Shown here piece by piece: positions 16,839-54,063 of a stretch of DNA of 64,000 nucleotides. The stretch spans positions 159,647 to 223,646 of IMG/VR virus record IMGVR_UViG_3300042326_002445. One strand, 5' to 3'. A program made the translations under genes and the position numbers. Numbering within the stretch: position 1 is the stretch's first letter; each line of letters starts with the position of its first letter. Under the pieces are notes generated by a model. That model did no database searches. It saw nothing but the letters and a program-made list of their open reading frames with translations, and was not told the origin of the DNA.

Positions 16839-16916
16839 AATGTATAATTTTATTTTCCTATATGGATCATTCTTTCCTTTCTTATTGTCTCGAAGGATAC
16901 GATATATTTAGAGTAG

Positions 16917-16987
16917 TGCCCCGTGATGTAACGGTAGCATCGGAGCCTTTGAAGCTTTTTGTCTTGGTTCGAATCCAAGCGGGGCAG
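16917..16987 (+). tRNA. tRNA-Gln (anticodon TTG)
   Basis: Acceptor TGCCCCG/CGGGGCA, anticodon loop CTTTGAA, GTTCGAAT T-loop, U1-A72 and G73; no encoded CCA. Confidence 0.93.
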
Positions 16988-16992
16988 TTTTT

Positions 16993-17388
16993 ATGAATAA
17001 AAGCGATATTTCAAAAGTAGAATTTATTTTTCCAAAATTAATTCAAATATGGGAAAAAGCACCAGAGTCAAGGCCTGCATCTATGTCTGGCGTCAGATGT
17101 GCTCATGACCTATGGGATTGGTGTGATGAAAGACTAATGGATTTTGATGATCTTGAAACATATTTGAGTATGTTTATAATTGAAAAATTATCTAAATTTT
17201 TTGCTTTGTCTATTACCATTAAAAATGGAACTCAAGAAATAAAAAATGTAGATGAAAATATATCTGTTTCTGGTTTCAGCATTATTTCATCTCTATCTGA
17301 AATGATAAAAATTTCTGAGAATATGAATGAATTAAAGAATAGTTCTGTTGAGACTATTCGAAAGACAGTTCTTAAGGCTGCTCGCTAA
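16993..17388 (+). CDS. hypothetical protein
   Basis: 131 aa ORF. Confidence 0.7.
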   Translation: MNKSDISKVEFIFPKLIQIWEKAPESRPASMSGVRCAHDLWDWCDERLMDFDDLETYLSMFIIEKLSKFFALSITIKNGTQEIKNVDENISVSGFSIISSLSEMIKISENMNELKNSSVETIRKTVLKAAR

Positions 17389-17658
17389 TTATCGTAGCTT
17401 TAATACATAGACGCACATTTCAGCTCTTTTGCTGAATAATTCTATACTTTTTTTAATTTCTATACAATTAAGGTTTTCTATAAAATCTTTATTTTTAAGA
17501 GTATCGTCTATTAGCAAATTAAATTCTTTTACAGTTTTATCTTCTAAGTCTTGTTTTAAAGCTTCTTTCCATAAAGAAATATCCCAACCAAATATTTTGT
17601 TTACACCTAAAGCCTTGAGGGTGTCTAGGTTGTTCGATAAATGATTAGGTTCGCACAT
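17389..17658 (-). CDS. hypothetical protein
   Basis: 89 aa ORF; stop abuts the convergent gene. Confidence 0.55.
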   Translation of the reverse strand: MCEPNHLSNNLDTLKALGVNKIFGWDISLWKEALKQDLEDKTVKEFNLLIDDTLKNKDFIENLNCIEIKKSIELFSKRAEMCVYVLKLR

Positions 17659-18283
17659 GATTATGGAAAAACACCTACAGTTTAATTCAGAAAAATTTAA
17701 TAAATTCTTTTCTTCTCCTTTTGATTTTTCAAAACAAATTTCTCTTGAAAAGTATTTGATTACCTCATTAGGTCATGATTTTGTTACAGAAGAAGAAAGA
17801 TGTAAAGTGCTTTTAAAAACTTCATTTACAAAAAACGAAGCTATGGGGTATGCAAGCTATAGTGGCGGTCACCCTTCTCGAAAGTTTATAACAAAACTTA
17901 TGCAGATAATGAGATCGTTAGACACGGAAATTATCTTGTTTTGGATGAACTGCTTGCAGTCTGACGAATATCACAGAGCATTTTTGCAAAAGTGTTGGCG
18001 AGCAAGTGGGTGTAAGCTAAGCGAAAATTGGCAGACAAGAGCATTTCGCATTTGGGATTTTGTAAAAGTTAATAAATTTGTCGCAACCAATGCTGTCATA
18101 ATATTGCCTGATAAAAAGTCTTGTGAAGACCATAAAGACCTTGACGGAGCTATGAATAATTTTGGAATGGCTGGATCAAATTTTTTTGTAAGAAAAAATA
18201 GGTATAGTTTACCTTCTTTTTGTATGTGTTTAAACATTGATGTTTTGAATGAATGTATCATAGACATGAAAGACGGGATATAA
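17657..18283 (+). CDS. hypothetical protein
   Basis: 208 aa ORF. Confidence 0.75.
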   Translation: MIMEKHLQFNSEKFNKFFSSPFDFSKQISLEKYLITSLGHDFVTEEERCKVLLKTSFTKNEAMGYASYSGGHPSRKFITKLMQIMRSLDTEIILFWMNCLQSDEYHRAFLQKCWRASGCKLSENWQTRAFRIWDFVKVNKFVATNAVIILPDKKSCEDHKDLDGAMNNFGMAGSNFFVRKNRYSLPSFCMCLNIDVLNECIIDMKDGI

Positions 18284-18289
18284 TACAGT

Positions 18290-18883
18290 ATGAGCAATCA
18301 GAAAAAATCAAAGTCAAAAATTTCACAAAAGTCTAATAGCGTAAAAAATTTTAATAACTACCATTCTCATATGTGGAAAACTTATGCATCTAATGTTTCG
18401 ACTGGGAGTATTAATTCTTACCCATATAAGTGGGAAGACAAGTCGTTTGAGCCAGAAATTATTGATTTAGGCTTCGAAGGATGGACTTTTTCTCTTACGC
18501 ACAATGTTACTCAGACAAAGATTGAGGGAATAAAACATTTTGAAGCTAGTGGAATATCTATTGTTATTGCAGCTTCAATTTTAGATAGTAGCAAAAATGA
18601 TTGGTATAAAGTTTTTGTGTCCCTCAATACAGCAACTCCAAATGATTCAAATATAATTAATCAAGATGAAAATAATATAGATATAAAAGTTTCAATCAAG
18701 TCTAATGATGATGACTACAAAAATTGGTTTAAAAACTGGTCAATTAACCAAGACGGCATGTGCTTATCTTTTTCTTCAAAAGACAACATGTCTGTAATTG
18801 AAGAAATGTCTATAATAGGAAATATTATAGAAAAAATTAAGGGGAGACTAATCCTTGAAAAACTTTCGCAAAACAAATCTTAA
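18290..18883 (+). CDS. hypothetical protein
   Basis: 197 aa ORF. Confidence 0.75.
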   Translation: MSNQKKSKSKISQKSNSVKNFNNYHSHMWKTYASNVSTGSINSYPYKWEDKSFEPEIIDLGFEGWTFSLTHNVTQTKIEGIKHFEASGISIVIAASILDSSKNDWYKVFVSLNTATPNDSNIINQDENNIDIKVSIKSNDDDYKNWFKNWSINQDGMCLSFSSKDNMSVIEEMSIIGNIIEKIKGRLILEKLSQNKS

Positions 18884-19004
18884 AAACAATCAAGTACAAA
18901 TCGATAAATGTGCTTTTAAGATATGGCTTAGTGGTTTTGTTGTAGGCGTGATACTAACTTTTTCTTTTGTTAGTTTGGTTATGGTGCTTAATGCTTGGCA
19001 TTAA
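18855..19004 (+). CDS. small single-pass membrane protein (not in ORF track)
   Basis: TTG start after GGGGAG; 49 aa with IWLSGFVVGVILTFSFVSLVMVL. Confidence 0.5.
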   Translation: MKNFRKTNLKNNQVQIDKCAFKIWLSGFVVGVILTFSFVSLVMVLNAWH

Positions 19005-19379
19005 TTAGAAAGCTATTTGACGCATTTGCTCAAGTAAAGCTTTGCCTGATGTAAGCAATTCTATGTTTACATTTTTTTCTTTTGCTTTTGTCGCATTTTT
19101 TGGGTCTTTTACATATTCTATTGCTTCTTGAAATACATTTTTTAAAGCTATTAGTGCGTCGTTGTTATTAGACTGTTCTGCTTCTTCTATAAAACAATGC
19201 CAAGTGTTGTTGTGAGTTAATCCTCTAGGACCTGTATTACCACCTTGTATGTTTTTTATTGGGTTTACTTTAATAAAATTTTTATTAAGTATATCTACTA
19301 GGTCTTTACATTCTTGAGCTAGAACTGTAGACTGATTTTGTGAAATTTTATTAAAATGTTTGGTAACTATTTTAAGCAT
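19005..19379 (-). CDS. hypothetical protein
   Basis: 124 aa; N-terminal FNKISQ resembles YKISQ of ORF 46503..47030. Confidence 0.7.
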   Translation of the reverse strand: MLKIVTKHFNKISQNQSTVLAQECKDLVDILNKNFIKVNPIKNIQGGNTGPRGLTHNNTWHCFIEEAEQSNNNDALIALKNVFQEAIEYVKDPKNATKAKEKNVNIELLTSGKALLEQMRQIAF

Positions 19380-19397
19380 ATTGGTAATTACCGTTAT

Positions 19398-20015
19398 TTA
19401 TCTTATATTCCTATAGTCTTTAAATGTGTTTTCTATATCAGAATGATCTGCTCTTTGCCAAGCGAGGTGAGGCCTAAAGCCATAACACGGCATCTTTTTC
19501 TGCAAAAATGCTAAATGCAAATCTGCTGGCTTAGTAAATATCACGTTTTCACTAAAACGTTCCATAATCATTTCTAAGGCTGTTCTTTTGATGGCGTAGC
19601 AATGGGTCGTGTATGTCTTTCTAAGGCGATGTACGTGCCTGTTTATCATCATTATTGGATTATGTCTATGACTTCCACCTAGATAAAGCATTTGCCAATC
19701 TTTTGGCACCATAGGATAGTATTCCTGAAATCTTTTACCTACATTTCTATCGAATTCTACGTCATCTTCCATAATAAGTGCTGTTTTTATTGTCTTGTCT
19801 GCCAGTATCATCTCAAACACTTTTCTATGAGACATGCAGCAGCCAGCAGCTCCTGGTTTTAGTTCACCTATATTTGTCAGAGTGTGACCGTCAACTGCGT
19901 CTACAAAATGAACGTCTAATTGCAATTCTGAGAAGATTTGTGAGCATCTTTCTCTACGATCTGTTCGCCTCTGCAGATTAATGCAGTAAATTTTATTAAA
20001 ATCTCTTAGTAACAT
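19398..20015 (-). CDS. GT25 glycosyltransferase
   Basis: CINLQRRTDRR, DAVDG, GCCMSH, MEDD. Confidence 0.85.
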   Translation of the reverse strand: MLLRDFNKIYCINLQRRTDRRERCSQIFSELQLDVHFVDAVDGHTLTNIGELKPGAAGCCMSHRKVFEMILADKTIKTALIMEDDVEFDRNVGKRFQEYYPMVPKDWQMLYLGGSHRHNPIMMINRHVHRLRKTYTTHCYAIKRTALEMIMERFSENVIFTKPADLHLAFLQKKMPCYGFRPHLAWQRADHSDIENTFKDYRNIR

Positions 20016-20049
20016 ATATGATGTTTTGTCGAAAAAATATAACAATACT

Positions 20050-23500: not shown

Positions 23501-23501
23501 C

Positions 23502-24131: not shown

Positions 24132-25097
24132 ATGAAAATATATAAAAAAATAAACTTTATTGACTACAATATATCTCATGCGGAAACATGGAAACACGCT
24201 AGTATAATGTGCGGTTGCAGAGTTCCTAAAGATTTGATGCACAATTATTATACACCTCCAAATAATATATGGTTAAAAAAATGTAATAATTTTTTTGAAG
24301 ATGAAGTAAATTCTGGAATATCTGTATTCACAGACCATGCAATTGTGGAAGTGAATAAATACAGATCGCAACATAAAGTTGCTTTAATTTTAGAACCCCC
24401 AATTGAGGCAAGGGGTATTTATGAAAAAGCCGTCAGTCTTCAGAATAAATTTGAGATTATATTTACTTTTCGAAAAAAATTAATAGAAAAAAATCCTGAA
24501 AAATTCAAATTCATGCCAGCTGATTTTGTTACATTAGAAGATGATGCGCATAAAATTCATACAAAAAATAAACTGATCTCTATGATATATTCTGGTATGA
24601 GAGGTCACAATAGAGATCTTAGGCATCAGGTTGGTAATATTTTGAGCGACAAAATTACATTATTTGGTGGAGGTAGTCCAAGCGGAGATGTGCCTTTAAA
24701 ATCTGATACTTTAAAAGACTATATGTTTTCTGTAGTAATAGAAAATTCAAAACCTTTTGACTACTATTTTACTGAAAAAATATTAGATTGTTTCATAACA
24801 GGTAATATCCCTATATATAATGGCTCTCCATCAATAGGAGATTTTTTTGACAAAAGGGGATTTCTCACATGGTCGTCTATAGACGAACTTGCAAATATTA
24901 TTGATTCTATTTCAGAAGATAAATATTATGAAATGCTGCCTTATGTAAAAATAAATTATGAATTAGCAAAAAAGTACGTTAGTGCTGATGACGTAATGAG
25001 TGATTTAATTTATGAAGCACTTCACAATAAAACGATAAATACTATGGAAAGATTTATATACAAAAATTGGAGTAATAATGAAAATAATCAATTATGA
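24132..25097 (+). CDS. GT10 (alpha-1,3/4-fucosyltransferase-like)
   Basis: YMFSVVIENS..YYFTEKILDCFITGNIPIY. Confidence 0.8.
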   Translation: MKIYKKINFIDYNISHAETWKHASIMCGCRVPKDLMHNYYTPPNNIWLKKCNNFFEDEVNSGISVFTDHAIVEVNKYRSQHKVALILEPPIEARGIYEKAVSLQNKFEIIFTFRKKLIEKNPEKFKFMPADFVTLEDDAHKIHTKNKLISMIYSGMRGHNRDLRHQVGNILSDKITLFGGGSPSGDVPLKSDTLKDYMFSVVIENSKPFDYYFTEKILDCFITGNIPIYNGSPSIGDFFDKRGFLTWSSIDELANIIDSISEDKYYEMLPYVKINYELAKKYVSADDVMSDLIYEALHNKTINTMERFIYKNWSNNENNQL

Positions 25098-32990: not shown

Positions 32991-33111
32991 TATACTCTCC
33001 TTGATATTTTATAATGATTATATTATATTTTACGGCATTACTGATTTAAATACTGTTTGTTTTACTGCGCATTTAATAAAATATGACGAAATAGGTATGG
33101 GTGACTAAATT

Positions 33112-33945
33112 ATGCTTTTATCAATATTGGTTCCAGGCAAAAATGACAACTTTAGATACAATGGTTCAAAAACCATTGAATTTAATATTAATCAAACTTT
33201 AGATAATATAGAATATTCTGGGTTTAAAGATGTAGAACTCGTATTGTGCGATTGGGGTAGTGAGAAGAAAATAGTAGATGAAATAGTTAAAAGAAAACAT
33301 AAGAATTTTAAATGTGTTTATGTTCCCCCAGATATAGCACAAAAATATAATGGTCAGGCAAATTATTCTATAGTGCATCCAATTAACACTGCATTTAGGC
33401 ATAGCTCTGGTAAATATGTATGCTTCTGGGATTCTGATTGCTTTGTGCTTCAAGATAGCTTTGTAAAGCTTTATGAGTTTGTTCTTCAAATGGAAGCTAC
33501 TCAAGACATGCAATTTTATTGGGGTTCTAGATATCATATACCGTATGAATCCTATAATGATTTAAGAAGTCATAAAGAATTAGTTGCAAAAATAAATAAT
33601 GGTATGCAAGTTATGCATGATAAAATAGCTGGAGGAGGTAAATTTATGGGAGCCTCTATATCATTGTTAATGAACAGAATTTTATGGGAGGATAGTACTG
33701 GATGGTATGAAAATCTTCCGTATTGGGGATGGCAGGATATTGAGTTCCACCATCGCTTGATGAAGAGATACAGCTATGGCGGCGATCTGGAAGATTGGGG
33801 CATGAGTTTTTTTCACATGCTTCAGCCTGCCAGTAAAGACGGCACAAAAAATAAGCACTTGATGAATCCCTCAATAAACGCAACATTCTTTAAAGCTAAT
33901 CCTCCAAGTTGGGGTTTAGCAAATGAGAAATTGGAAATAATGTAA
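33112..33945 (+). CDS. GT2-like glycosyltransferase, tandem copy 1
   Basis: LCDWGS, WDSD DxD, WGWQDIEF. Confidence 0.7.
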   Translation: MLLSILVPGKNDNFRYNGSKTIEFNINQTLDNIEYSGFKDVELVLCDWGSEKKIVDEIVKRKHKNFKCVYVPPDIAQKYNGQANYSIVHPINTAFRHSSGKYVCFWDSDCFVLQDSFVKLYEFVLQMEATQDMQFYWGSRYHIPYESYNDLRSHKELVAKINNGMQVMHDKIAGGGKFMGASISLLMNRILWEDSTGWYENLPYWGWQDIEFHHRLMKRYSYGGDLEDWGMSFFHMLQPASKDGTKNKHLMNPSINATFFKANPPSWGLANEKLEIM

Positions 33946-41374: not shown

Positions 41375-42295
41375 TTATATTTTATGAGATTCTGCTGCTA
41401 TCCTATTGAGTACGGATTGTTTTTGTAACTGTAAAAAGTCTTCAAACATTCTTACCAGCTTTAACTTTTCCTCATTATTTAAATGAATAAAATATTTTTG
41501 TATTTTTAAACCTTTATTCCTTACTGGTAGCGGAGTCACTTTTTCATTACTTGGATGCCATAAATGGAACATTTCTATACGTGGATTGTCACATCCTACA
41601 AACTTTTTAAATAATTCAATTTTATCCACAAAGAACTGATCTTCTATTGAGTATGCCCAGAAGTAATATGGATCAAATCCACCAACTTTATTAAATAGCT
41701 CTCTTTTAATAACTATAGATCCTCCTGGAGCTCCTGGCCTTCCAGTATGAAAAGAGTTAGGTCTTACAATTGCTTGTTCTACACTTATATGATTAGAAAA
41801 TATCTCATTTGAGATCTGTTCATTTAAATAATTTACTCTTCTACCAGCAAATGACTGGACTATATCTTTTCCATTTAAGTTATCTCTTAACTGCTTCCAG
41901 AAATGCTTTGGCATCCATAGGTCAACGTCATGAAAATGTATGTATTTTGAATCATGTAAAAAACTTCCAATATTCATTGATAAGCATTTATTGAACAAGT
42001 CTTTGTTTTTGTTCATGAAAATATAGTCTATGTCATGTTGTATGCACATGTCTATTGCTTCTGGATTATTTGAGTGTTCAACAACAACCATTCTATGAGA
42101 ATTTTCACTCTCTTGTCTACATTCATTAAAGCATTTTATAAATTGAGCAAGATGCTTGTTTCTTCCACATACGGGAACAACTGTAAGAAAATCGTAGTAA
42201 GATCTTGGAACAGACCTATATCTTGCGTTTTCTAAACGTTCAATAATATTGCTTTTATTGCCAATAAAATTGTCTAATAAAAACTGCATGTTCAT
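41375..42295 (-). CDS. GT2/GT7-like glycosyltransferase
   Basis: HDVD DxD, GGFDP...IED, FHLWH. Confidence 0.7.
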   Translation of the reverse strand: MNMQFLLDNFIGNKSNIIERLENARYRSVPRSYYDFLTVVPVCGRNKHLAQFIKCFNECRQESENSHRMVVVEHSNNPEAIDMCIQHDIDYIFMNKNKDLFNKCLSMNIGSFLHDSKYIHFHDVDLWMPKHFWKQLRDNLNGKDIVQSFAGRRVNYLNEQISNEIFSNHISVEQAIVRPNSFHTGRPGAPGGSIVIKRELFNKVGGFDPYYFWAYSIEDQFFVDKIELFKKFVGCDNPRIEMFHLWHPSNEKVTPLPVRNKGLKIQKYFIHLNNEEKLKLVRMFEDFLQLQKQSVLNRIAAESHKI

Positions 42296-42315
42296 GTTTT
42301 ATTTATCGTCATTAT

Positions 42316-42343
42316 AAAAATAACCGCTGTCTTGCGACAGCGG
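42316..42343 (-). terminator. intrinsic terminator
   Basis: Minus strand CCGCTGTC-GCAA-GACAGCGG followed by TTATTTTT. Confidence 0.8.
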
Positions 42344-42418: not shown

Positions 42419-43231
42419 TTAGACGTATCGTCTGTCTGGATTCTTCTTCATGATCTCTTTGCCCATTTTGACGAGAGCGTTTTTGCTTCTCATCGCATGC
42501 ACGATAGCTGGATCAACAACCGACTCCTTATGAGTCATGTATTCAACAAATTTCCAAGGCATACCTTCAGGTATGTTGTCTTTTAATGCTCCAGTCCATT
42601 CACTTGCCCATATGTCCATGTAGTTTTTATGCATTCTTTTTTCGTAATCAAGACTGAACATATGAGACAATACCCCTATAGGGACCTCCTCTGGTAAATT
42701 AAGTCCTAATTTTGCTTGATATTGTCTGAAATTATTCACTACATATTTTGCGTGTTTGGCGAACTCTTTTTTACAAATCCAGAAACCACCATTTGTGTTG
42801 TACACCACTTTTTGAGACACTCCAAACTGTCTCCAAAGGTTGACCATATTTTCATTCTTCACGCTCCACCAGTCAGACCTTAGTGTTGTTGGGTCATTGA
42901 GCGGACTTTCCAGAAAGCTGTGCCAAACATCATTACCTATAATTTCTGAAAAATCTAGGATTGGTTTTCTGACAAAATAATGATCACTATCTATAAATAC
43001 TAGCAGATCGTAATCCATTTCTGCGACCTTGACAAGATACTCAAATTTCCAATATTGAGTTTGATCCATTTGTATCTCTTTTATCATAGCTCTTGTTTTG
43101 CAGCCATGAAGAGGCTCATCGCAGTAAACCACAATGTCATGTTCAATGCCGCAGTTCCTCATGCTTTGCACAAGAGATTGTAGCATATACCTATATTCAC
43201 CCCAAGCAACAGACCAAATCAATGTTTTCAT
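42419..43231 (-). CDS. GT-A nucleotide-diphospho-sugar transferase-like
   Basis: FIDSDH DxD, NGGFWI, PEE; paralog of 6915..7808. Confidence 0.65.
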   Translation of the reverse strand: MKTLIWSVAWGEYRYMLQSLVQSMRNCGIEHDIVVYCDEPLHGCKTRAMIKEIQMDQTQYWKFEYLVKVAEMDYDLLVFIDSDHYFVRKPILDFSEIIGNDVWHSFLESPLNDPTTLRSDWWSVKNENMVNLWRQFGVSQKVVYNTNGGFWICKKEFAKHAKYVVNNFRQYQAKLGLNLPEEVPIGVLSHMFSLDYEKRMHKNYMDIWASEWTGALKDNIPEGMPWKFVEYMTHKESVVDPAIVHAMRSKNALVKMGKEIMKKNPDRRYV

Positions 43232-44283
43232 GATTTTACCTCTATGTTTTGACCAGCAAGGTTTAAAAGATTATCCCATTTAGCAATATATTTATTCTTG
43301 TCACACCATATATCTTTGGCGTACTCACTAGCCTTTTTGCCCATAGTCTTTCTAGTATGCGTGTCACACATATGCCTTGCTGCGTCCTTAGCCTGATCAA
43401 GATTGTCCCATAAGAATCCGCATTCATTTTCTATGATCATGTTTGGAAAGTTCCATTTGCGTGGAGCTATTACTGGTGCTCCAGTAAGCTGGCTTTCCAT
43501 AATTGCCCTACTTTGATTTTCTACAAATTTAAAATTGCAGTTGTACAGAAATACGTCAAGGTCTACGAACCACTCATGAGTTGGCATAGCGTTAGTTGCG
43601 TACAGTCTCCATTTATCATTGAATTCATACCAGCTGTAAATGGAAGATAATGAGTCAGACCATCCTAGTATTGAATACTCACAGTTTAGCCCTTCGCAAA
43701 CTTGGTCATAAAAAATAGGAAAGTTATCGCCAAATTTCATTACGTCATCTCTGGAAACTTTTCCAAACACTGTTTTATTTCTTAAGGGTCTGTCTATATA
43801 CTTCCACATATCAGCTTCAAAGTAATTTTCTAATACAAATGTTTTTTGAAGACGATTTTGATTTGCTACTTCTTTATGCATCACAGACCTATGAAAGGGT
43901 GATGTGTATAGTACAACGTCTACTTGATTTTTCTTTATGGCGCTCAATTCCTCTGGAGTATGCCACATCATATCATTAGACCACATGAATTTTAGACCAG
44001 ATTCTTTTATGAAATTTATTCTTTGAAAATCAGCAAAAACACGGAAATTGCAATTGGAGTAGGCAAAACCTGTTAATTTTTTTGGCAAGCTTGACATCAT
44101 GCAATATTTTATGCCAAGTTTATCTAAAAAGTCTGTATTATGCTTTTCTCTCAGTCTAAATTCATCATTGGGAATACATGTAATATTATGAGTATCTTTT
44201 AATAAAACGAGCAATTCTTTCAGTCTTGTGTCTGCTCCACCAAGATCTGATATCCATTGAAATACATATAGGTTTTCTTTCAT
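43228..44283 (-). CDS. GT4 (GT-B) glycosyltransferase
   Basis: LGGADTRL, ENQSRAIMESQLTGAPVIAP, ENECGFL. Confidence 0.75.
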   Translation of the reverse strand: MKENLYVFQWISDLGGADTRLKELLVLLKDTHNITCIPNDEFRLREKHNTDFLDKLGIKYCMMSSLPKKLTGFAYSNCNFRVFADFQRINFIKESGLKFMWSNDMMWHTPEELSAIKKNQVDVVLYTSPFHRSVMHKEVANQNRLQKTFVLENYFEADMWKYIDRPLRNKTVFGKVSRDDVMKFGDNFPIFYDQVCEGLNCEYSILGWSDSLSSIYSWYEFNDKWRLYATNAMPTHEWFVDLDVFLYNCNFKFVENQSRAIMESQLTGAPVIAPRKWNFPNMIIENECGFLWDNLDQAKDAARHMCDTHTRKTMGKKASEYAKDIWCDKNKYIAKWDNLLNLAGQNIEVKS

Positions 44284-44336
44284 GTATCATTTATCGGTTA
44301 AAAAGTAAATCTGCTGATTAGACGAAGAACTATTAT

Positions 44337-46302: not shown

Positions 46303-46309
46303 ATTCAAA

Positions 46310-46382: not shown

Positions 46383-46386
46383 ATAA

Positions 46387-46476
46387 CGGATAGAGAGGGA
46401 TTCGAACCCCCGGATGACTTCTTGAGCCATCGGCGGTTTAGTAAACCGCAGCCTTAAACCACTCGGCCATCTATCC
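46387..46476 (-). tRNA. tRNA-Ser body with anticodon ACT (A34)
   Basis: GGATAGA/TCTATCC acceptor, GCGGT-TTACTAA-ACCGC anticodon arm, long variable arm, G73. Confidence 0.88.
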
Positions 46477-46502
46477 ATGAATTTTATATCGGCACTGGAT
46501 CT

Positions 46503-47030
46503 TCACATGCCTGGTGGATTATAGGTTTGTTCGTATTCTTTTTTTGCAATCCTGTAATAAGCGCCTTCGCCCTCTTTTACAAGATAGTCTCCTGGCTTAA
46601 GAACCATGTCTTCTCCCCAAGAAGCTTTAAAGGTAATTGGTTCTGTTCCTAAATATTCAGCTACCATTCTAGGAGATTGTTCTGGAGTTACATCTTCCCC
46701 CATATTACCTTCATACATCTTTGAAAACTTTGAGGACTTTATAACATATTTTTCCGAACTTGGGCCACTCATTATGACATCGCCATCTTTAGCGGTGTTT
46801 TCTGTTTCTTTTCCGTCAGAAGTCATTGTCACTACTCTTAAATCTTCCTTATCATTTACTCCATAACTCATTGGAGGCATGCTTTCTATATTGCCGCCAA
46901 TGATTTTAAAGAAAGAGTATCTTCTTGCTTGTTTGTGAGTAGGTAGAAATTTCAAGCTTGATGCTACGTCTTCAATCCCATGCGAATTTCTACCTTGATC
47001 TTCTGATTGCGATATTTTGTACCAGTTCAT
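46503..47030 (-). CDS. PGDYG-like domain protein with MNWYKISQ N-terminal motif
   Basis: ASWGEDMVLKPGDYLV...YRIAKKEYEQTY. Confidence 0.65.
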   Translation of the reverse strand: MNWYKISQSEDQGRNSHGIEDVASSLKFLPTHKQARRYSFFKIIGGNIESMPPMSYGVNDKEDLRVVTMTSDGKETENTAKDGDVIMSGPSSEKYVIKSSKFSKMYEGNMGEDVTPEQSPRMVAEYLGTEPITFKASWGEDMVLKPGDYLVKEGEGAYYRIAKKEYEQTYNPPGM

Positions 47031-47131
47031 TTTTTCTCCTATTGTGTAAAATTATTTACAAAAATAACTACTCCTGTACCTTGCTTGTATTTTATACGTT
47101 ATATATTTCCGAAATAATGCTTGGAGGATTC

Positions 47132-47335
47132 ATGAAGAATTTTAAAATCTACTATACAGTTGCCACTATCACCAGTTTAATATTGCTTACTTTAAAAGTA
47201 TTTAACTTTTGCGAAATAGGATGGTCTTGGATTTTGTTGCCAGTTGCCGCACCGCTATTACTTCTTATTGCAGCAGCTGCCTTTGCGATTTGCATAGCAA
47301 TTTGCATGGCTTGTTTGTTTTTGCTTTTGAAATAG
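47132..47335 (+). CDS. small membrane protein
   Basis: GGAGG RBS; LTLKV...WSWILLP and a long hydrophobic helix. Confidence 0.75.
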   Translation: MKNFKIYYTVATITSLILLTLKVFNFCEIGWSWILLPVAAPLLLLIAAAAFAICIAICMACLFLLLK

Positions 47336-48496: not shown

Positions 48497-48626
48497 ACAA
48501 ACTCCTCCCTGCTTATATGTCGATTAAAGCGTGCCCGAAGCAGCTGTTATTATTTCTCTTTTAAGCAATCTTTCACCTTGAGGAGGAATATGTAAAAACA
48601 TCGATAAATTAAAAAATAGAGTTTTT

Positions 48627-49022
48627 ATGGAAAAAGAATCTTTAGAAAAATCGGCAGACCTAAGACAATGGCTCAAAGAAAAATGGGTGGATATATCTCG
48701 TACAGATAAAAGCGGCAAACACCCACCATGCGGTAGGTCGGATTCATCTAAGGGGGCCTACCCAAAATGTCGGCCCTCCAAGAAAGTATCCAAGAAGACC
48801 CCCACAACATCCCGTGGAATGTCAAAAAAGACTAAAAGCAAGGCTGTCAGACAAAAAAGAGATGCTGAAAAGTCTCCAAGAGTGGACAAAAAGCCTCATA
48901 TGACATCTCATCATGATTTAAAAAATAAAAAATCTTCCTCTGAAATCCGTATGACCAAAGAGGCTTGGTTTGAGATAGGCTTAAAAGCGGGGTGGATCAA
49001 TGTCAAAGACAGCTCAAATTAG
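48627..49022 (+). CDS. basic hypothetical protein
   Basis: WLKEKWVDISR..KHPPCGR...YPKCRP; ends with EAWFEIGLKAGWI. Confidence 0.75.
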   Translation: MEKESLEKSADLRQWLKEKWVDISRTDKSGKHPPCGRSDSSKGAYPKCRPSKKVSKKTPTTSRGMSKKTKSKAVRQKRDAEKSPRVDKKPHMTSHHDLKNKKSSSEIRMTKEAWFEIGLKAGWINVKDSSN

Positions 49023-49087: not shown

Positions 49088-49115
49088 TTGCACTTATATC
49101 ATGCACTAGTATAAT
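49088..49115 (+). promoter_or_regulatory. sigma70-like promoter, predicted leaderless transcript
   Basis: TTGCAC 49088-49093, 16 nt, TATAAT 49110-49115; ATG 49122 at +7. Confidence 0.75.
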
Positions 49116-49121
49116 GCGTTA

Positions 49122-49352
49122 ATGTTCGCCATAAAAGTTGTCGGATATGACATTGACGGGGAGCCTCTTTTGCTTGCCGATGGCATTGGCGGTGAAGGGC
49201 GTAAAATTCTTGTTTTTTCATCTAAAGAATCTGCAGACAAAACATGCAAAGAGATGAATGTCATCAGTGGTCGCATGAAGACTACTGGTGGTTACGAAGT
49301 CATTAAGATTAAAAAAGAGTGGATTGAAGGCATGTCAGTCGAGCATCTGTAA
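49122..49352 (+). CDS. hypothetical protein
   Basis: 76 aa ORF; no RBS. Confidence 0.7.
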   Translation: MFAIKVVGYDIDGEPLLLADGIGGEGRKILVFSSKESADKTCKEMNVISGRMKTTGGYEVIKIKKEWIEGMSVEHL

Positions 49353-49388
49353 TCTTCGTATAAAAGTAAAAAAAGTTTCCGACAGCAC

Positions 49389-49416
49389 TTGACAAGGCTG
49401 TGCGCGCATGTATAGT
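49389..49416 (+). promoter_or_regulatory. sigma70-like promoter
   Basis: TTGACA 49389-49394, 16 nt, TG-TATAGT 49411-49416. Confidence 0.7.
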
Positions 49417-49553
49417 ACATGCACAAGGCGATTGCTTCCGTATACGCAAACGCTTTGTCTGCAGGCACTTACAAAAACTCTTTCATCAACTGAATCTGTT
49501 GTTTCAGTGATGCGAAGGAACAGTACTTGCTGAATTCTAGGAGAGTAAGCCAG

Positions 49554-50180: not shown

Positions 50181-50229
50181 AATAGCAATATCGCCTTCTG
50201 TCTTTTTCTTATGTTGCCGATATAGGGGG

Positions 50230-50526
50230 ATGGACAACATAGAAAAAACAGAAGGCGATATTATTTCTATCTTCAATCAGATAGATTACATTTTGCAAAA
50301 CTTAGATGTAGAGCCACTACCTGGGCATGTGATTGCTACTTTATGTCAATCTAGGCGCTATATCAATTCACTTGAGCATGACTTGCAGTTTCTTGCCAGT
50401 GAAGAAAAATGGGTTTTGCAAAACGAATTCATAAATCAATTAAAAAATGAGAATTTAGATCTTAGACGACAAATGGACAATAACAATGAACCAGAAGTGT
50501 CCGACAATTTGAATAGTGAAATTTAA
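50230..50526 (+). CDS. hypothetical coiled-coil protein
   Basis: 98 aa ORF with GGGGG RBS. Confidence 0.65.
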   Translation: MDNIEKTEGDIISIFNQIDYILQNLDVEPLPGHVIATLCQSRRYINSLEHDLQFLASEEKWVLQNEFINQLKNENLDLRRQMDNNNEPEVSDNLNSEI

Positions 50527-50534
50527 CATCCAAG

Positions 50535-50882
50535 ATGGAGAAAAAAATAATGTCAGAAAATATTGTAAAACTTGATACTGATAATTTTGACAAAGAAATT
50601 TATCAGAGTGATACTCCTTGTTTTGTTCAGTTCAGCACGCCGTGGTGTGCTCCGTGCAGAACCTTTGCGCCTATCATGGCTTCTTTATCTGAGCAGTTTA
50701 ATGGCAAGTGCAAATTTGGAAAAATCGATGCAGAAGAAAATATGGAACTAGCATATAAGTTTAATATTTCTTCTGTTCCAACTATGCTAATATTTAAAAA
50801 AGATCAAGTGGTTGAGCGAATAAATGGACTGGTTCCTAGAGATAATCTAGTATCAAAAATAGAAAACGTTTTACAATCATAA
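50535..50882 (+). CDS. trxA: thioredoxin
   Basis: FSTPWCAPCR active site; SVPT cis-Pro loop. Confidence 0.9.
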   Translation: MEKKIMSENIVKLDTDNFDKEIYQSDTPCFVQFSTPWCAPCRTFAPIMASLSEQFNGKCKFGKIDAEENMELAYKFNISSVPTMLIFKKDQVVERINGLVPRDNLVSKIENVLQS

Positions 50883-50898
50883 GTAAGATTGGATAAAA

Positions 50899-51894
50899 AT
50901 GCAAAAAACAGCGATTATCACAGGCGTCAATGGTCAGGATGGATCTTACCTTTCAGAGCTACTGCTATCGAAAGGTTACAGAGTAATAGGGCTGAAGAGA
51001 AGAACTTCAACTATTAATACATCTAGAGTAGATCATTTGATGTCTCACCCAGATTTTATATTGCGTTATTATGACTTGCAAGATGGACCATGCATAACTC
51101 ACCTTCTTGGCTCATGTCATGTTGATGAACTTTACAATCTGGCTGCACAGTCTCATGTGGGGGTGTCTTTTGAAATTCCAGAATACACATCATACGGGAT
51201 ATGCCAAGGAACCTTAAAGATACTTGAGGCAATACGCGCATCAAGTCCTCATACAAAGTTCTACCAAGCATCTTCTTCTGAAATGTTTGGAGACAGTACT
51301 GATTATGATGACAATCAGGCTTTTAATGAGAATAGTAAAATGTTACCTGTATCCCCATATGCATGCTCAAAGCTGCATGCGCATCACATGACTCGTGTTT
51401 ACAGAAATGCATACGGTATGCATGCGTCTTCCGGCATACTGTTTAATCATGAAAGCCCTCGTCGTGGTGAAACTTTTGTAACACGCAAAATCACAATTGC
51501 TGCTGCAAAGATTAAGCTTGGCATGCAAAGAAAGTTGAGTCTAGGCAATCTTGATGCTAAAAGAGATTGGGGTCATGCAGCAGATTATGTTGAAGCCATG
51601 TGGCTTATGCTTCAGCACGATTTTGGCGATGACTACGTGATCGCTACGAATGAAACTTACACTGTACGTGACTTCTTGAAGGTAGTTTTTGATCACGCTG
51701 GACTAGGAAGCTATGAGCAATATGTAGTAATAGACCAAAGACTTTTCCGTCCAAATGAAGTTCCTTTCTTAAAAGGAAATCCCGCAAAGGCAAAGTCAGT
51801 TTTGGGATGGAAGCCGAAGTACAACATGGAATCGCTAGCAATCAGCATGTTTGATGAAGACATGAAAAATTTAACAGAAAAGGTTTTAAGATGA
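50899..51894 (+). CDS. gmd: GDP-mannose 4,6-dehydratase
   Basis: ITGVNGQDGSYL, YNLAAQSHV, YQASSSEMFG, SPYACSK, NHESPRRGETFVTRKI, LGNLDAKRDWGHA. Confidence 0.95.
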   Translation: MQKTAIITGVNGQDGSYLSELLLSKGYRVIGLKRRTSTINTSRVDHLMSHPDFILRYYDLQDGPCITHLLGSCHVDELYNLAAQSHVGVSFEIPEYTSYGICQGTLKILEAIRASSPHTKFYQASSSEMFGDSTDYDDNQAFNENSKMLPVSPYACSKLHAHHMTRVYRNAYGMHASSGILFNHESPRRGETFVTRKITIAAAKIKLGMQRKLSLGNLDAKRDWGHAADYVEAMWLMLQHDFGDDYVIATNETYTVRDFLKVVFDHAGLGSYEQYVVIDQRLFRPNEVPFLKGNPAKAKSVLGWKPKYNMESLAISMFDEDMKNLTEKVLR

Positions 51895-52298
51895 GTAAGA
51901 AAAAAGATAATTCGAAAAAAGTTAATGGGAAGAAGCATGCAAAGAAAGAGGTTAAGAAGAAGGAAAAGAAGACTTCAAAGACAGCACAATCTAAGCCTAT
52001 GAAACCTCAGTTTGTATGGCCAAAAGAACATGAAGTAAAAGACAATAAGCCATGCAATGTCTCTGAGGAAAAGAAGGAAGAAACTTTGATGCCCGAAGAA
52101 GCTGGTTTTGCTTCATTTGAGGAACCCAAGCTGAATGGTGATGAAACTCCATTTATATTTACAAGTCACGTTTCGGTTGGAACATCTGCAAACTTTGATG
52201 AAATTAAAAGCAAGACATCTGAAATTGTTGAAAAAACAAAGAAAGACATCAAGGGCATGTGGAAAACTTTCATACGAAGGATGAAAGGGCTGGCTTGA
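51891..52298 (+). CDS. K/E-rich hypothetical protein
   Basis: 135 aa; ATGA overlap with gmd. Confidence 0.7.
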   Translation: MSKKKDNSKKVNGKKHAKKEVKKKEKKTSKTAQSKPMKPQFVWPKEHEVKDNKPCNVSEEKKEETLMPEEAGFASFEEPKLNGDETPFIFTSHVSVGTSANFDEIKSKTSEIVEKTKKDIKGMWKTFIRRMKGLA

Positions 52299-52322
52299 TT
52301 AAAGTTTTTGCAGGTGTATAAT
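52295..52322 (+). promoter_or_regulatory. sigma70-like promoter with extended -10, near-leaderless
   Basis: TTGATT 52295-52300, 16 nt, TG-TATAAT 52317-52322; ATG at 52331. Confidence 0.6.
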
Positions 52323-52330
52323 AGCCTGTT

Positions 52331-52525
52331 ATGATTCTTAAAGCATACTTTCTTCCAGTTGCAGCAGCTTTCTGCGTTTTTGCAGTAACTGCTGCAATTT
52401 TTATTCACAGCAAATTAAAAAATAAAAAAGTAACTAGAAAAAGTTATTCTGGAAATTCTTTGTCTTCTCAAATGCTTGACGACATTAAAAAAATAGAGAA
52501 GATTCTCTATGATAGTCAGGGATGA
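52331..52525 (+). CDS. small membrane-anchored protein
   Basis: N-terminal hydrophobic helix followed by basic residues. Confidence 0.65.
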   Translation: MILKAYFLPVAAAFCVFAVTAAIFIHSKLKNKKVTRKSYSGNSLSSQMLDDIKKIEKILYDSQG

Positions 52526-52549
52526 TTTGAGAAATCTTTTGATTACCTG

Positions 52550-52578
52550 TTGACAAGTATAGACAACATCTCTATACT
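52550..52578 (+). promoter_or_regulatory. sigma70 promoter of csrA
   Basis: TTGACA 52550-52555, 17 nt, TATACT 52573-52578. Confidence 0.8.
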
Positions 52579-52621
52579 ACAAGAGAAGTCACGTGACTCA
52601 AACATCAAGCCAAGGAAGGTT

Positions 52622-52813
52622 ATGCAAAAAGAAAAAAACGAAAAGAAGGTTTTAGTTGTTTCTCGAAAAGTAGGAGAGATTGTGGTGATTGGCGACAGCG
52701 CCAGCCCTCTTGGAGAGATTGAAGTTGTTCGAATTGACGGGGGTAAGGTAAGAATTGCATTGAGGTTTCCTGAAGACATCAGGATCAACCGTAAAGAGAT
52801 TGCGTTAGCGTAA
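52622..52813 (+). CDS. csrA: carbon storage regulator CsrA/RsmA-family RNA-binding protein
   Basis: VLVVSRKVGEIVVIG...EVVRIDGGKVRIAL.FPEDIRINRKEI. Confidence 0.85.
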   Translation: MQKEKNEKKVLVVSRKVGEIVVIGDSASPLGEIEVVRIDGGKVRIALRFPEDIRINRKEIALA

Positions 52814-52837
52814 TAAGTTTTTTCATTTAGATTTTTG

Positions 52838-52868
52838 AAGGCTGCACATGAATATGTGCGGCCTTTTT
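52838..52868 (+). terminator. intrinsic terminator after csrA
   Basis: AAGGCTGCACAT-GAAT-ATGTGCGGCCTT plus T tract. Confidence 0.8.
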
Positions 52869-52913
52869 ATCTTTTTAGAACAGTGTTGGATATAGGTGTA
52901 TAGGAGATACTTC

Positions 52914-53543
52914 ATGGGAGCAAATGATCCTGTAGCCACATACCTTATCATTGAGCATTCTGGTGAAAAATACTATTCATACCGTGAAAGTAAGGAACAC
53001 TTTGCTGTTGCGGAAGAATCGAGAAGAGCCTCTGGGCTTAAAAGGCTTTCAGAAACTCTTTTAGATGAAGACTGTGATCTTTCACATCTTCCCGCCAATA
53101 CGTACATTGTGATTAATCTTGATTCTCAAAATGCTTGCATTGCTTCAAGAGAAGAAGTACTTATGAAAGATTTTTGGGGTGAAAAGTGTGAAGATTTTGA
53201 GGGCAAGTGTGCTGGATGTATCGCATGGCAGATTTTTGAGTCTACGGGCACTGTCCCCTTGTCAGATGAAGTTTCTGACAAAGTGAAAATGAATAAGAAT
53301 AATGGAAAGCTTGCCACATGGGACTACAGAGTTGTTAGATCAGTTTGTCCTACGAGTGGCGAAGAAAGCTTTGCAATTTATGAAGTCTACTATGACAAAT
53401 GCGGCAGACCAGAGAGTCGCACCGCAGATCCTGTCGCTGCATTTGGCAATAATTTGAAAGAATTGAAGAAAGACATGAAATACATGAAAAAGGCACTGAA
53501 AGAGCCTGTATTGGACGATTCAATCTTTAACGAGGAAAAATAA
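52914..53543 (+). CDS. hypothetical multi-module protein
   Basis: AGGAG RBS; DFWGEKC...CAGCIAW segment and WDYRV...YEVYYD...PVL segment. Confidence 0.7.
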   Translation: MGANDPVATYLIIEHSGEKYYSYRESKEHFAVAEESRRASGLKRLSETLLDEDCDLSHLPANTYIVINLDSQNACIASREEVLMKDFWGEKCEDFEGKCAGCIAWQIFESTGTVPLSDEVSDKVKMNKNNGKLATWDYRVVRSVCPTSGEESFAIYEVYYDKCGRPESRTADPVAAFGNNLKELKKDMKYMKKALKEPVLDDSIFNEEK

Positions 53544-53544
53544 A

Positions 53545-54009
53545 ATGGCTTTAAACTTTGGAACATTCGGAACTTCTAGACTTTACGGAACTGGTAATTT
53601 TTTACATCAGTCAAACGCAGAAGGCTCTACCTATCTAGACTTTGCGTATACACTTCCGCTTTCTTTTACTCCATCTTTTGAGCACCCAGTTCCAACTGAT
53701 GAAGGAATCTATCAGCCCACTGTAGGACATTCATATCCTAATGTGCTTTTTACTGGATTCGCTGACGGTTTTTGGGTGCACAGAGTTTTTCTTGAAGGAC
53801 GATTGGTAAAAACATTTACACTTGTTGATCAGCAGTTTGCAATACCAATACAGTTTGATTTTGTTGAAAGCGTGTGCTTGCAGACATCTACAGAATTAGA
53901 TGGAGGTGATATAGACGGAAAATGTCCCGATGTTCCAGGCCCTGCCAGTATTGTTACCTTGTGCGCAGGTCTAGCACTAATTATGGGTAAGCGCAGTAGA
54001 CGTTTTTAA
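53545..54009 (+). CDS. protein with a PEP-CTERM-like C-terminal sorting signal
   Basis: VPGPASIVTLCAGLALIMGKRSRRF: Pro-x-Pro motif, TM helix, Arg cluster at the C-terminus. Confidence 0.7.
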   Translation: MALNFGTFGTSRLYGTGNFLHQSNAEGSTYLDFAYTLPLSFTPSFEHPVPTDEGIYQPTVGHSYPNVLFTGFADGFWVHRVFLEGRLVKTFTLVDQQFAIPIQFDFVESVCLQTSTELDGGDIDGKCPDVPGPASIVTLCAGLALIMGKRSRRF

Positions 54010-54063
54010 TTAAACGCACCTTTCTGCTGTCACACACTGTGCGTAAAAAGTCGATAATTGAAT

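What the first reader, a model, noticed from the sequence alone, without database searches (positions are those of the whole stretch)
16900..54058. Recurring CGATA(A/T)A motif upstream of genes and tRNAs: candidate phage-specific promoter
Seen: CGATAAAT at 17635, 48602, and on the minus strand at 42301-42308 and 44289-44296. Variants are CGATATAT 16900 (before tRNA-Gln), minus-strand CGATATAA 46484-46491 (before the four-tRNA cluster), CGATATAG 50218 and CGATAAT 54052. All lie 4-17 nt before a start codon or tRNA and lack a -35. CG looks scarce in this AT-rich DNA. Known: T4-type late promoters are a lone -10 element (TATAAATA). Inference: the recognition site of a phage sigma factor.
Basis: partly seen in the sequence, partly recalled or inferred. 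Interest (0 to 1): 0.6.

Follow-up and report, generated by a model that had tools for sequence, protein, structure and literature searches.

The report
Phage-specific CGATAAAT promoter element
A short DNA word, CGATA(A/T)A(T), sits just upstream of genes and tRNAs in an uncultured giant lake-water phage and its relatives, and is most likely a one-part promoter read with a phage-made sigma factor; this is a clear but not revolutionary example of how such phages run their own transcription.

Summary
The window is the last 64 kb of a 223.6-kb viral contig from lake water.

- **Placement:** across the whole contig CGATAAAT occurs 15 times. Nine copies lie 7-50 nt upstream of a gene or tRNA, in sense orientation, where only 1.8% of positions lie (p about 1e-12).
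- **Unbiased searches:** it is the top upstream 8-mer and the top motif of a de novo search of non-coding stretches.
- **Sequence rules:** the leading C is essential. T4's TATAAATA is not enriched. No -35 element exists.
- **Geometry:** a third of sites put the C 12-14 nt before the ATG, or 14-17 nt before a tRNA 5' end. In the published sigma-28 register (C-13 G-12 A-11) that places the start on the ATG, giving leaderless mRNAs.
- **Conservation:** the element is kept at the same distance before an orthologous glycosyltransferase gene in four diverged genomes, although the flanks differ. It is absent from more distant phages carrying that gene.
- **Readers:** the contig encodes two divergent sigma-70-family proteins. 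No gp55 homologue and no phage RNA polymerase were found.

Best reading: a lone, CG-prefixed -10-type promoter for a phage sigma factor. It is of a middle or general class, not T4-type late. No transcript data exist, and which sigma reads it is unproven.

The parts
6011..6018 (+). CGATAAAG, 45 nt before the ATG at 6056 (289-aa gene).
   Evidence: The same word at the same distance occurs in relatives L019 and L020, and CGATAAAG occurs 72 nt before the orthologue in L021. Conservation here may partly reflect coding constraint.
11476..11483 (-). Variant CGAAAAAT, with its C 15 nt before the ATG at 11468 (836-aa helicase-like gene). Lower confidence.
   Evidence: The CGAAAWA class is only weakly enriched upstream (6 of 55).
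16900..16907 (+). CGATATAT, with its C 17 nt before the 5' end of tRNA-Gln (16917-16987).
17635..17642 (+). CGATAAAT, 22 nt before the ATG at 17657 (208-aa gene).
18902..18909 (+). CGATAAAT in the 121-nt gap between convergent genes. Only a 49-aa ORF (18855-19004) spans it, and its target is unclear.
25033..25040 (+). CGATAAAT, 45 nt before the ATG at 25078, inside the end of the preceding gene. A possible internal operon promoter.
33087..33094 (+). Variant CGAAATAG, 25 nt before the ATG at 33112, in a 121-nt divergent intergenic region.
42301..42308 (-). CGATAAAT with its C 13 nt before the ATG at 42295 (306-aa gene). There is no room for a Shine-Dalgarno site, so the geometry is leaderless.
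   Evidence: The orthologue in L035 has CGAAAAAA with its C 12 nt before the ATG.
42324..42343 (-). Intrinsic-terminator hairpin with a T-run, immediately upstream of the 42308 element. This is a terminator-then-promoter arrangement.
   Evidence: The fold is -17.1 kcal/mol with z -5.6.
44289..44296 (-). CGATAAAT with its C 13 nt before the ATG at 44283 (351-aa glycosyltransferase), in leaderless geometry. This is the best-conserved site.
   Evidence: CGATAAA is kept 13-14 nt before the orthologous ATG in L033, L034 and L035 while the flanks differ. It is absent in distant phages L036 and L038 and in the cellular homologue L037.
46484..46491 (-). CGATATAA with its C 14-15 nt before the 5' end of the four-tRNA cluster (Ser, Asn, Thr, Tyr; 46477 down to 46144).
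47110..47117 (+). Variant CGAAATAA, 22 nt before the ATG at 47132. That ATG opens a 67-aa membrane ORF preceded by GGAGG.
48602..48609 (+). CGATAAAT, 25 nt before the ATG at 48627 (131-aa gene, DUF5872 by synteny).
50218..50225 (+). CGATATAG with its C 12 nt before the ATG at 50230 (98-aa gene), in leaderless geometry.
54052..54059 (+). Variant CGATAATT with its C 12 nt before the ATG at 54064. That ATG opens an unannotated 41-aa membrane ORF (54064-54189).

Best explanation
CGATA(A/T)A(T), with looser variants CGA(A/T)A(A/T)A, is the single recognition element of a promoter class specific to this phage lineage.

**Proposed mechanism (inferred):**
- It is a -10-type element in which C and G occupy -13/-12 and the first A is -11.
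- Host core RNA polymerase reads it when carrying an alternative sigma factor. That sigma is most likely one of the two encoded by the phage.
- No -35 element is needed.
- Transcription would start about 13 nt downstream of the C. At roughly a third of sites this is the A of the ATG (leaderless mRNA), or a few nucleotides before a mature tRNA 5' end. At the other sites it leaves a 10-35-nt leader, often with a Shine-Dalgarno site.

**The sigma candidates (genome coordinates, just outside the window):**
- Sigma-1: 281 aa, about 157472-158317, roughly 1.3 kb upstream of the window start.
- Sigma-2: 254 aa, 119906-120670, SigH-like.

**Shown here:** placement, orientation, sequence requirements, conservation in relatives, presence of the sigma genes.

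**Inferred:** that the element is a promoter, the start position, and which sigma reads it. Sigma-1 genes carry sigma-70-type promoters in relatives, and sigma-2 lies in an operon behind a CGATATAA site. This fits a cascade of host sigma-70, then sigma-1, then CGATA promoters, but it does not prove it.
For: 1. **Unbiased enrichment.** CGATAAAT is the top 8-mer in the 50 nt upstream of all genes and tRNAs (9 of 15 copies, 34-fold, p 1.5e-11), on a par with the Shine-Dalgarno word AGGAG. It is first of 840 permutations. A de novo expectation-maximisation search of 70 non-coding upstream stretches converges on (A)CGATAWAT, ahead of the Shine-Dalgarno motif.
2. **Strand and sequence specificity.** The reverse complement has 1 of 15 copies upstream. 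[A/T/G]GATAAAT has 1 of 74.
3. **It precedes tRNAs as well as proteins.** tRNA-Gln, the four-tRNA cluster, and a tRNA in relative L021. This argues against a translation signal.
4. **Geometry.** 10 of 27 upstream sites in this genome and its relatives have the C 12-14 nt before the start (p 6e-6, though some sites are orthologous). The solved sigma-28 open complex has its -10 element as (-15)GCCGATAA(-8), that is C-13 G-12 A-11 (PMC12784957). That register puts +1 on the ATG.
5. **Phylogenetic footprint.** CGATAAA is kept 13-14 nt before the glycosyltransferase ATG in four genomes that share almost no 15-mers.
6. **Independent replicate.** In seven relative loci (101 kb, gene calls from the source database) CGATAWA has 10 of 36 copies in the upstream zone against 3.1% expected (p 9e-8). 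[A/T/G]GATAWA has 12 of 264, not significant.
7. **Negative control.** Distant phages and a cellular contig carrying the same glycosyltransferase lack the motif.
8. **Terminator-then-promoter arrangement** at 42343-42301.
9. **Two sigma-70-family genes are present.**
   - Sigma-1: Sigma70_r2 24.7 bits (cut-off 24) and phrog_351 at 2e-10; a weak Sigma70_r4 match at the C-terminus; the predicted fold matches full-length sigma factors.
   - Sigma-2: SigH-family models at 2.5e-23 and PDB 3mzy SigH at 7.5e-9.
10. **No phage RNA polymerase** of T7 type or beta/beta' type was detected.
11. **Sigma-70-type promoters** (TTGACA-N17-TATACT and similar) precede the sigma-1 gene in relatives.
Against: - There is no transcript evidence at all. 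All 24 public runs that hold this sequence are listed as (guessed) DNA, lake-water metagenomes kept only as contigs; none is RNA.
- Nothing links either sigma to the motif. Both sigma candidates have a sigma-4-like domain, yet no -35 element is found, so that domain's role is unexplained.
- Neither sigma belongs to the FliA/WhiG family whose -10 element the motif resembles (TIGR02479 18-21 bits against a cut-off of 189.6). In the sigma-1/WhiG alignment printed, my reading by eye is that sigma-1 lacks the basic residue at the position where sigma-28 contacts G-12. No tool scored this.
- The contig is only about 55% of the genome, so another polymerase or sigma may be missing.
- 24 of 54 CGATAWA copies lie inside genes in sense orientation. 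The looser CGAAAWA class is weakly enriched, and at least one such site (genome 158717) looks like a coding coincidence.
- Several conserved sites overlap coding sequence.
Confidence: 0.65

Rival explanations
1. The element is a promoter, but a host alternative sigma factor reads it, not a phage one. A FliA/sigma-28-like group-3 sigma is the obvious candidate, because its -10 consensus GCCGATAA contains the same CGATAA core.
For: - The core and inferred register are identical to the sigma-28 -10 element (PMC12784957).
- Neither phage sigma is a FliA-family member.
- The host is unknown.
Against: - The sigma-28 -35 element (TAAA/TCTAAAG) and the G-C at -15/-14 are absent.
- The motif tracks the phage lineage across relatives of differing GC content.
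- The phage carries two sigma genes of its own.
- Relying on a flagellar sigma for replication and tRNA genes would be unusual (own knowledge).
Confidence: 0.12
2. The element is the promoter of a phage-encoded RNA polymerase that has not been recognised. The polymerase could lie in the missing ~45% of the genome or inside one of the giant ORFs.
For: - The contig is about 55% complete.
- Twelve ORFs longer than 1200 aa have no recognisable domains.
- Short single-element promoters are typical of phage polymerases (own knowledge).
Against: - No T7-like, beta or beta' domains were found.
- The DxDGD matches in the giant ORFs look, by eye, like dockerin or EF-hand-type repeats and not polymerase catalytic loops.
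- The motif looks like a sigma-type -10 element, with an A at the -11 position followed by an AT-rich tract.
- Two sigma genes are present.
Confidence: 0.1
3. The element acts at the RNA level or as a regulator's operator. It could be an RNA-processing site, a translational operator, or a binding site for a phage DNA-binding protein, and not a promoter.
For: - The distance to the start codon is fixed (12-14 nt) at a third of sites.
- Some copies lie within operons.
Against: - It precedes tRNA genes at the same distance.
- Distances otherwise range from 12 to more than 45 nt.
- The element is not palindromic and occurs as single copies.
- It follows a terminator at 42324-42343.
- No Rfam family matches.
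Confidence: 0.08
4. It is a chance or compositional artefact of AT-rich intergenic DNA.
For: - The total count is only about 1.7 times the expectation.
- Intergenic DNA is AT-rich.
Against: - It ranks first of 840 same-composition permutations.
- The leading C is required.
- It is strand-specific.
- The result is replicated in relatives.
- It is conserved at orthologous sites.
Confidence: 0.02

Closest known systems
Sigma-28 / FliA / SigD / WhiG (group-3) promoters: TAAA-N15-GCCGATAA
   Same: - The core CGATAA is identical.
- The inferred register is the same (C-13 G-12 A-11), judged from the distance to leaderless start codons against the solved fliC complex (PMC12784957).
- In sigma-28 the G-C pair just upstream acts as an extended -10 element. 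A CG prefix that could similarly make up for a weak or absent -35 is my inference.
   Different: - No -35 element, and no conserved G-C at -15/-14.
- The last positions favour A/T-A-T.
- The phage sigmas are not FliA-family members.
- The targets are phage replication, glycosyltransferase and tRNA genes.
T4-type late promoters (TATAAATA; gp55 + gp33 + the gp45 sliding clamp)
   Same: - A lone AT-rich -10-type element without a -35.
- ATAAAT is shared.
- A phage-supplied specificity factor.
- One sigma gene here lies between the clamp-loader and clamp genes.
   Different: - TATAAATA is not enriched, and C-G replaces T-A.
- No gp55 homologue was found.
- Both sigmas have a sigma-4-like domain.
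- The downstream genes are not specifically late genes.
- The clamp link is untested; the complex prediction gave no answer.
Single-element promoters of phage-encoded sigma factors in phiEco32 and 7-11 (TAATGTATA / TGATGT)
   Same: A short -10-like element of about 9 bp without a -35, upstream of middle and late genes. It is read by a divergent phage sigma-70-family protein, while early genes use host sigma-70 promoters (PMC4331800).
   Different: - The sequence differs.
- The phage lineage is unrelated (a lake phage of more than 223 kb).
- There are two sigma genes.
- Leaderless geometry is frequent, and the element is used before tRNA genes.
- Homology of the sigmas to phiEco32 gp36 was not tested.
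Extended -10 (TGn-TATAAT) promoters of primary sigma factors
   Same: A dinucleotide just upstream of the -10 hexamer can make up for a missing -35 element (as summarised in PMC11598898).
   Different: The dinucleotide here is CG, directly abutting A-11, not TG at -15/-14. The hexamer is not TATAAT.

Membership tests
T4-type late promoter system | Consensus TATAAATA at -10 | tested here: not met
   Only 2 of 51 TATAAATA copies lie in the upstream zone. The enriched word needs C-G: [A/T/G]GATAAAT has 1 of 74 upstream.
T4-type late promoter system | gp55-type sigma (about 185 aa, a sigma-2 equivalent without sigma-4) | tested here: not met
   T4 gp55 and phrog_234 find nothing in the 223-kb record. 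The two sigma-like proteins found have C-terminal sigma-4-like domains. The record is only about 55% complete.
T4-type late promoter system | No -35 element | tested here: met
   No conserved position lies between -45 and -1 of the motif, except a lone A at -37.
T4-type late promoter system | Activation through the sliding clamp bound by the sigma C-terminus | tested here: inconclusive
   The sigma-2 gene lies between the clamp-loader and clamp genes. The complex prediction of the sigma-2 tail with the clamp gave no answer.
Sigma-28 / FliA-type promoter | -10 core CGATAA with C-13 G-12 A-11 | tested here: met
   The core is identical. The modal distance of 13 nt from the C to the ATG fits the published register. 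The start sites themselves are not mapped.
Sigma-28 / FliA-type promoter | -35 element TAAA(GTTT) at fixed spacing, and G-C at -15/-14 | tested here: not met
   Neither is conserved in 27-29 aligned sites.
Sigma-28 / FliA-type promoter | Read by a FliA/WhiG-family sigma | tested here: not met
   TIGR02479 scores 18.1 and 20.9 bits against a cut-off of 189.6. WhiG is the best PDB hit for sigma-1, but only at E 0.006. Host sigma factors are unknown.
Single-element promoters of phage-encoded sigma factors (phiEco32-like) | A lone -10-like element upstream of non-early genes, with host sigma-70 promoters before the early genes | tested here: met
   Sigma-70-like TTGACA-N16-17-TATAGT/TATACT sites occur in the higher-GC region 49-64 kb of the window and before the sigma-1 gene in relatives.
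Single-element promoters of phage-encoded sigma factors (phiEco32-like) | A phage-encoded sigma shown to direct transcription from the element | not testable with these tools
SigH-type promoters (RNAGGAWWW-N11-12-RNNGAAT; recalled from own knowledge, not checked) | -35 AGGA box plus -10 GAAT | tested here: not met
   Sigma-2 is SigH-like, but no AGGA box occurs at a fixed distance. The -10 word is GATA/GAAA, not GAAT.

The most novel reading that the evidence does not exclude
This clade of uncultured giant freshwater phages may run a two-sigma cascade on -35-less, CG-prefixed -10 elements.
- One sigma would read CGATAWAT before replication, glycosyltransferase and tRNA genes. Many of these transcripts would begin exactly at the start codon or near the tRNA 5' end.
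- The second, SigH-like sigma is encoded between the clamp-loader and clamp genes. It would read the related word ACGAAATAT found in both intergenic gaps of the giant tail-gene module.
- That second step might be coupled to the sliding clamp, as in T4, but with a full sigma-2 plus sigma-4 protein.
Probability: 0.15. Interest if true: 0.6.

Novelty: new member of a known kind. Interest (0 to 1): 0.42.

Why it matters
- **Annotation.** It gives a concrete, testable promoter consensus for an uncultured lineage of very large lake phages. This allows operon and timing annotation of these genomes and reveals small unannotated genes, for example the 41-aa ORF at 54064 and the 67-aa ORF at 47132.
- **Transcript types.** It points to widespread leaderless transcription, and to tRNA transcripts that start near the mature 5' end.
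- **Sigma mechanism.** Two phage sigma factors could be paired with a defined -35-less element whose core matches the sigma-28 -10 element. This would be a useful natural case for studying how a CG prefix can replace a -35 contact.

Tried and rejected
- **RNA evidence:** The look-up of sequencing runs returned only guessed-DNA lake-water runs kept as contigs. Read laying was therefore not used, because contigs cannot show starts.
- **Close relatives in IMG/VR:** a DnaB query found none. A sigma-1 profile found only a second assembly of the same phage and very distant hits. Useful relatives came from the look-up of encoding contigs instead.
- **Cultured relatives:** none. The DNA polymerase is at most 40% identical to faecal phage contigs and 36% to a Streptomyces phage. 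Sigma-1 has no tblastn hit, and sigma-2 has only weak ones.
- **Sigma-2 tail with the clamp dimer:** no verdict, so it counts neither for nor against binding.
- **Permissive motif model:** a 12-wide expectation-maximisation model merged the motif with Shine-Dalgarno-like words and was discarded as a site list.
- **Hairpins upstream of sites 17635, 48602 and 44296:** not better than shuffles. Only 42308 has a real terminator.
- **GGATAWA as a general variant:** not enriched upstream.
- **WhiB as a clue to an actinobacterial host:** absent.
- **Literature search for the 8-mer:** it returned only primer sequences.
- **Site at genome 158717 (CGAAATAA):** rejected as a likely coding coincidence, because it is kept only in close relatives.

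Full report
**Context.** The window is bases 159,647-223,646 of a single 223,646-bp viral record. CheckV rates the record about 55% complete, and its GC content is 35%. Identical sequence occurs only in lake-water metagenomes, and no RNA run holds it. No cultured relative exists.

The rest of the contig holds:
- a module of giant ORFs up to 5,596 aa, one of which has a tail-fibre hit;
- a replication module with helicases, a DnaB-like helicase, a DnaE-like polymerase, a UvsX-like recombinase, a clamp loader and a clamp.

The window itself carries six tRNAs, a long array of glycosyltransferase-like genes, and a higher-GC right end with sigma-70-like promoters.

**Observation.** The copy at 54052 precedes an unannotated 41-aa membrane ORF. 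In the window CGATAWA occurs 25 times against 15.3 +/- 3.8 in shuffles.

The real signal is where the copies lie. Genome-wide, 9 of 15 CGATAAAT and 17 of 54 CGATAWA sit in the sense-strand zone 7-50 nt upstream of a gene or tRNA. That zone holds 1.8% of positions. Further tests agree:
- An unbiased k-mer scan of all upstream regions ranks CGATAAAT first among 8-mers, level with the Shine-Dalgarno word AGGAG.
- CGATAAAT ranks first of 840 permutations of its own letters.
- A de novo expectation-maximisation search on 70 non-coding upstream stretches converges on (A)CGATAWAT.
- The reverse complement is not enriched.
- The leading C is indispensable: A/T/G-GATAAAT has 1 of 74 copies upstream.
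- T4's TATAAATA is not enriched, at 2 of 51.
- CpG is scarce, observed/expected 0.61.
- No -35-like position is conserved.

**Anatomy.** The invariant letters are C, G, A, -, A, -, A. The fourth letter is T more often than A, the sixth is A or T, and the eighth is mostly T.

Distances from the C to the downstream start fall into two groups:
- A sharp mode at 12-14 nt holds 10 of 27 sites in this genome and its relatives (p 6e-6, some sites orthologous). This leaves no room for a ribosome-binding site.
- A spread of 17-48 nt covers the rest, often with a GGAG-type site in between.

The two tRNA-linked copies put the C 14-17 nt before the mature 5' end. The site at 42308 directly follows a strong terminator hairpin.

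**Relatives.** Homologues of sigma-1 and of the glycosyltransferase at 43228-44283 led to eight syntenic contigs from other samples. Those contigs share almost no 15-mers with this genome or with each other.
- Before the glycosyltransferase orthologue the element is kept at the same distance in all four genomes while the flanks differ: CGATAAAT, CGATAAAA, CGATAAAT and CGATAAAG, with the C 13-14 nt before the ATG.
- The neighbouring 306-aa gene has CGATAAAT here and CGAAAAAA in L035 at the same place.
- Relative L021 has CGATATAG before a tRNA, and CGATAAAA with its C 12 nt before a methyltransferase ATG.
- Pooled over seven relative loci, with the source's own gene calls, CGATAWA has 10 of 36 copies in the upstream zone (p 9e-8). 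The C-less word is not enriched.
- More distant phages (GC 57% and 25%) and a cellular Cyanobium-like contig carry the same glycosyltransferase without the motif. The element therefore belongs to the phage lineage, not to the gene.

**Who reads it.** The contig encodes two sigma-70-family proteins.
- **Sigma-1.** It is 281 aa after correcting the start by comparison with homologues, and lies 1.3 kb upstream of the window. It has a region-2 match just above Pfam's cut-off, PHROG sigma families, a conserved C-terminal helix-turn-helix with a weak region-4 match, and a predicted fold that aligns with full-length sigma factors.
- **Sigma-2.** It is 254 aa and matches SigH-family models along its whole length, far below their cut-offs. 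It lies between the clamp-loader and clamp genes.

Neither is a FliA/WhiG member, and neither resembles T4 gp55. No T7-like or multisubunit polymerase domain was found. The DxDGD strings in the giant ORFs look, by eye, like calcium-binding-type repeats.

In relatives the sigma-1 gene is preceded by good sigma-70-type promoters. Sigma-2 sits in an operon behind a CGATATAA site. This suggests, but does not show, that sigma-1 reads the motif.

**Mechanism proposed.** The core CGATAA equals the -10 element of sigma-28 promoters. In the solved Pseudomonas sigma-28 open complex the fliC -10 element is (-15)GCCGATAA(-8), and the A at -11 is flipped out (PMC12784957).

Applying that register here puts +1 thirteen nucleotides after the C. 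That is exactly the A of the ATG at the modal sites, and just ahead of the tRNA 5' ends. I therefore read the element as a -10-type promoter whose CG prefix substitutes for a -35 contact. It would yield leaderless mRNAs at about a third of sites.

The resemblance to sigma-28 is functional, not a matter of family membership. The -35 TAAA box and the upstream G-C are missing, and the sigmas are not FliA-like.

The closest known kinds are the single-element promoters of phage-encoded sigmas in phiEco32 and 7-11 (PMC4331800) and T4 late promoters (PMC2988020). It differs from the latter in sequence, in the factor, and in gene class.

**Limits.**
- No transcript data exist, so start sites are inferred.
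- The sigma assignment is inferred.
- The genome is incomplete.
- The looser CGAAAWA variants are only weakly enriched, and at least one is probably a coding coincidence.
- Both intergenic gaps inside the giant tail-gene module carry a longer shared word ending in ACGAAATAT. This may be a separate late class, but two sites cannot decide it.
- An A 37 nt upstream of the C in 20 of 27 sites is unexplained.

**Verdict.** The promoter reading is well supported by statistics, geometry and comparative evidence. The T4/gp55 analogy is not supported. This is a new member of a known kind, a phage-lineage-specific single-element promoter with phage sigma factors. Interest is moderate.

Noticed in passing
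Genome 371-84881 and 127234-152899 (loci L011-L018), outside the window: Twelve ORFs exceed 1,200 aa, the largest being 5,596 aa, and they are packed almost without gaps. Of the four scanned against PHROGs, three have no family match and one has a central tail fibre J hit. Several carry repeated DFDGDG-type (dockerin or EF-hand-like) segments.
   Followed up: partly
window 20026-44283: About 25 consecutive genes of 200-350 aa. By synteny with annotated relatives (L033-L035) they are glycosyltransferases, methyltransferases and sugar epimerases. This is an unusually large glycan-modification arsenal for a phage.
   Followed up: partly
window 5796-5829: A sigma-70-type promoter in leaderless geometry: TTGACA, 17 nt, TATGAT, 6 nt, ATG. 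It is conserved in relatives L019 and L020. Other good TTGACA-N16-17-TATAGT/TATACT sites lie at 49389 and 52550, and by eye near 55790 and 63100.
   Followed up: partly
window 2385-2395, 4780-4790, 8286-8299: GGATATATATA lies 15 nt before the ATG at 2400 and also upstream of the gene at 4842. GGATATAGATATAG lies before tRNA-Ser(gga). These words are conserved in L019-L021, so they may form a second promoter-like motif, although GGATAWA as such is not enriched upstream.
   Followed up: partly
Genome 118798-121815 (L010, L016, L017): The SigH-like sigma gene lies between the clamp-loader and sliding-clamp genes. Its protein ends in a hydrophobic and acidic tail, as the clamp-binding ends of T4 gp55 and gp33 do. 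The complex prediction gave no verdict.
   Followed up: partly
Genome 46790-46879 and 63671-63733: The only two sizeable intergenic gaps inside the giant tail-gene module both contain a shared longer word ending in ACGAAATAT. This may be a distinct late promoter class.
   Followed up: no
37 nt upstream of the C of the motif, across sites in the window and in relatives: An A occurs in 20 of 27 sites (p about 1e-3 after correction), with no neighbouring conservation. Unexplained.
   Followed up: no
window 46386-46477 (- strand): A tRNA typed as Ser with the anticodon ACT, which is unusual. It is the first gene of the four-tRNA cluster.
   Followed up: no
window 43228-44283 (- strand); L037: The glycosyltransferase is 55% identical to a gene on a cellular, Cyanobium-like contig (GC 63%, next to RelA/SpoT and ABC transporter genes). 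This is a possible hint at gene exchange with picocyanobacteria or at the host.
   Followed up: partly
window 2866-3678, 3569-4741; genome 158265-158760: Auxiliary genes: a TilS-like tRNA-lysidine synthase domain (ATP_bind_3), an IMPDH or FMN-dehydrogenase-like protein, and a SET-domain protein that overlaps the end of the sigma-1 gene. The assignments come from the Pfam calls on relatives.
   Followed up: no
window 56000-64000: GC rises from about 33% to 43-47% towards the contig end. A weak Sigma70_r4-like helix-turn-helix lies at 56468-56536. This is possibly the early region, or DNA of different origin.
   Followed up: no
window 47132-47335 and 54064-54189: Two small membrane-protein ORFs (67 aa and 41 aa) that a simple ORF caller misses. 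Each lies directly behind a motif copy.
   Followed up: yes
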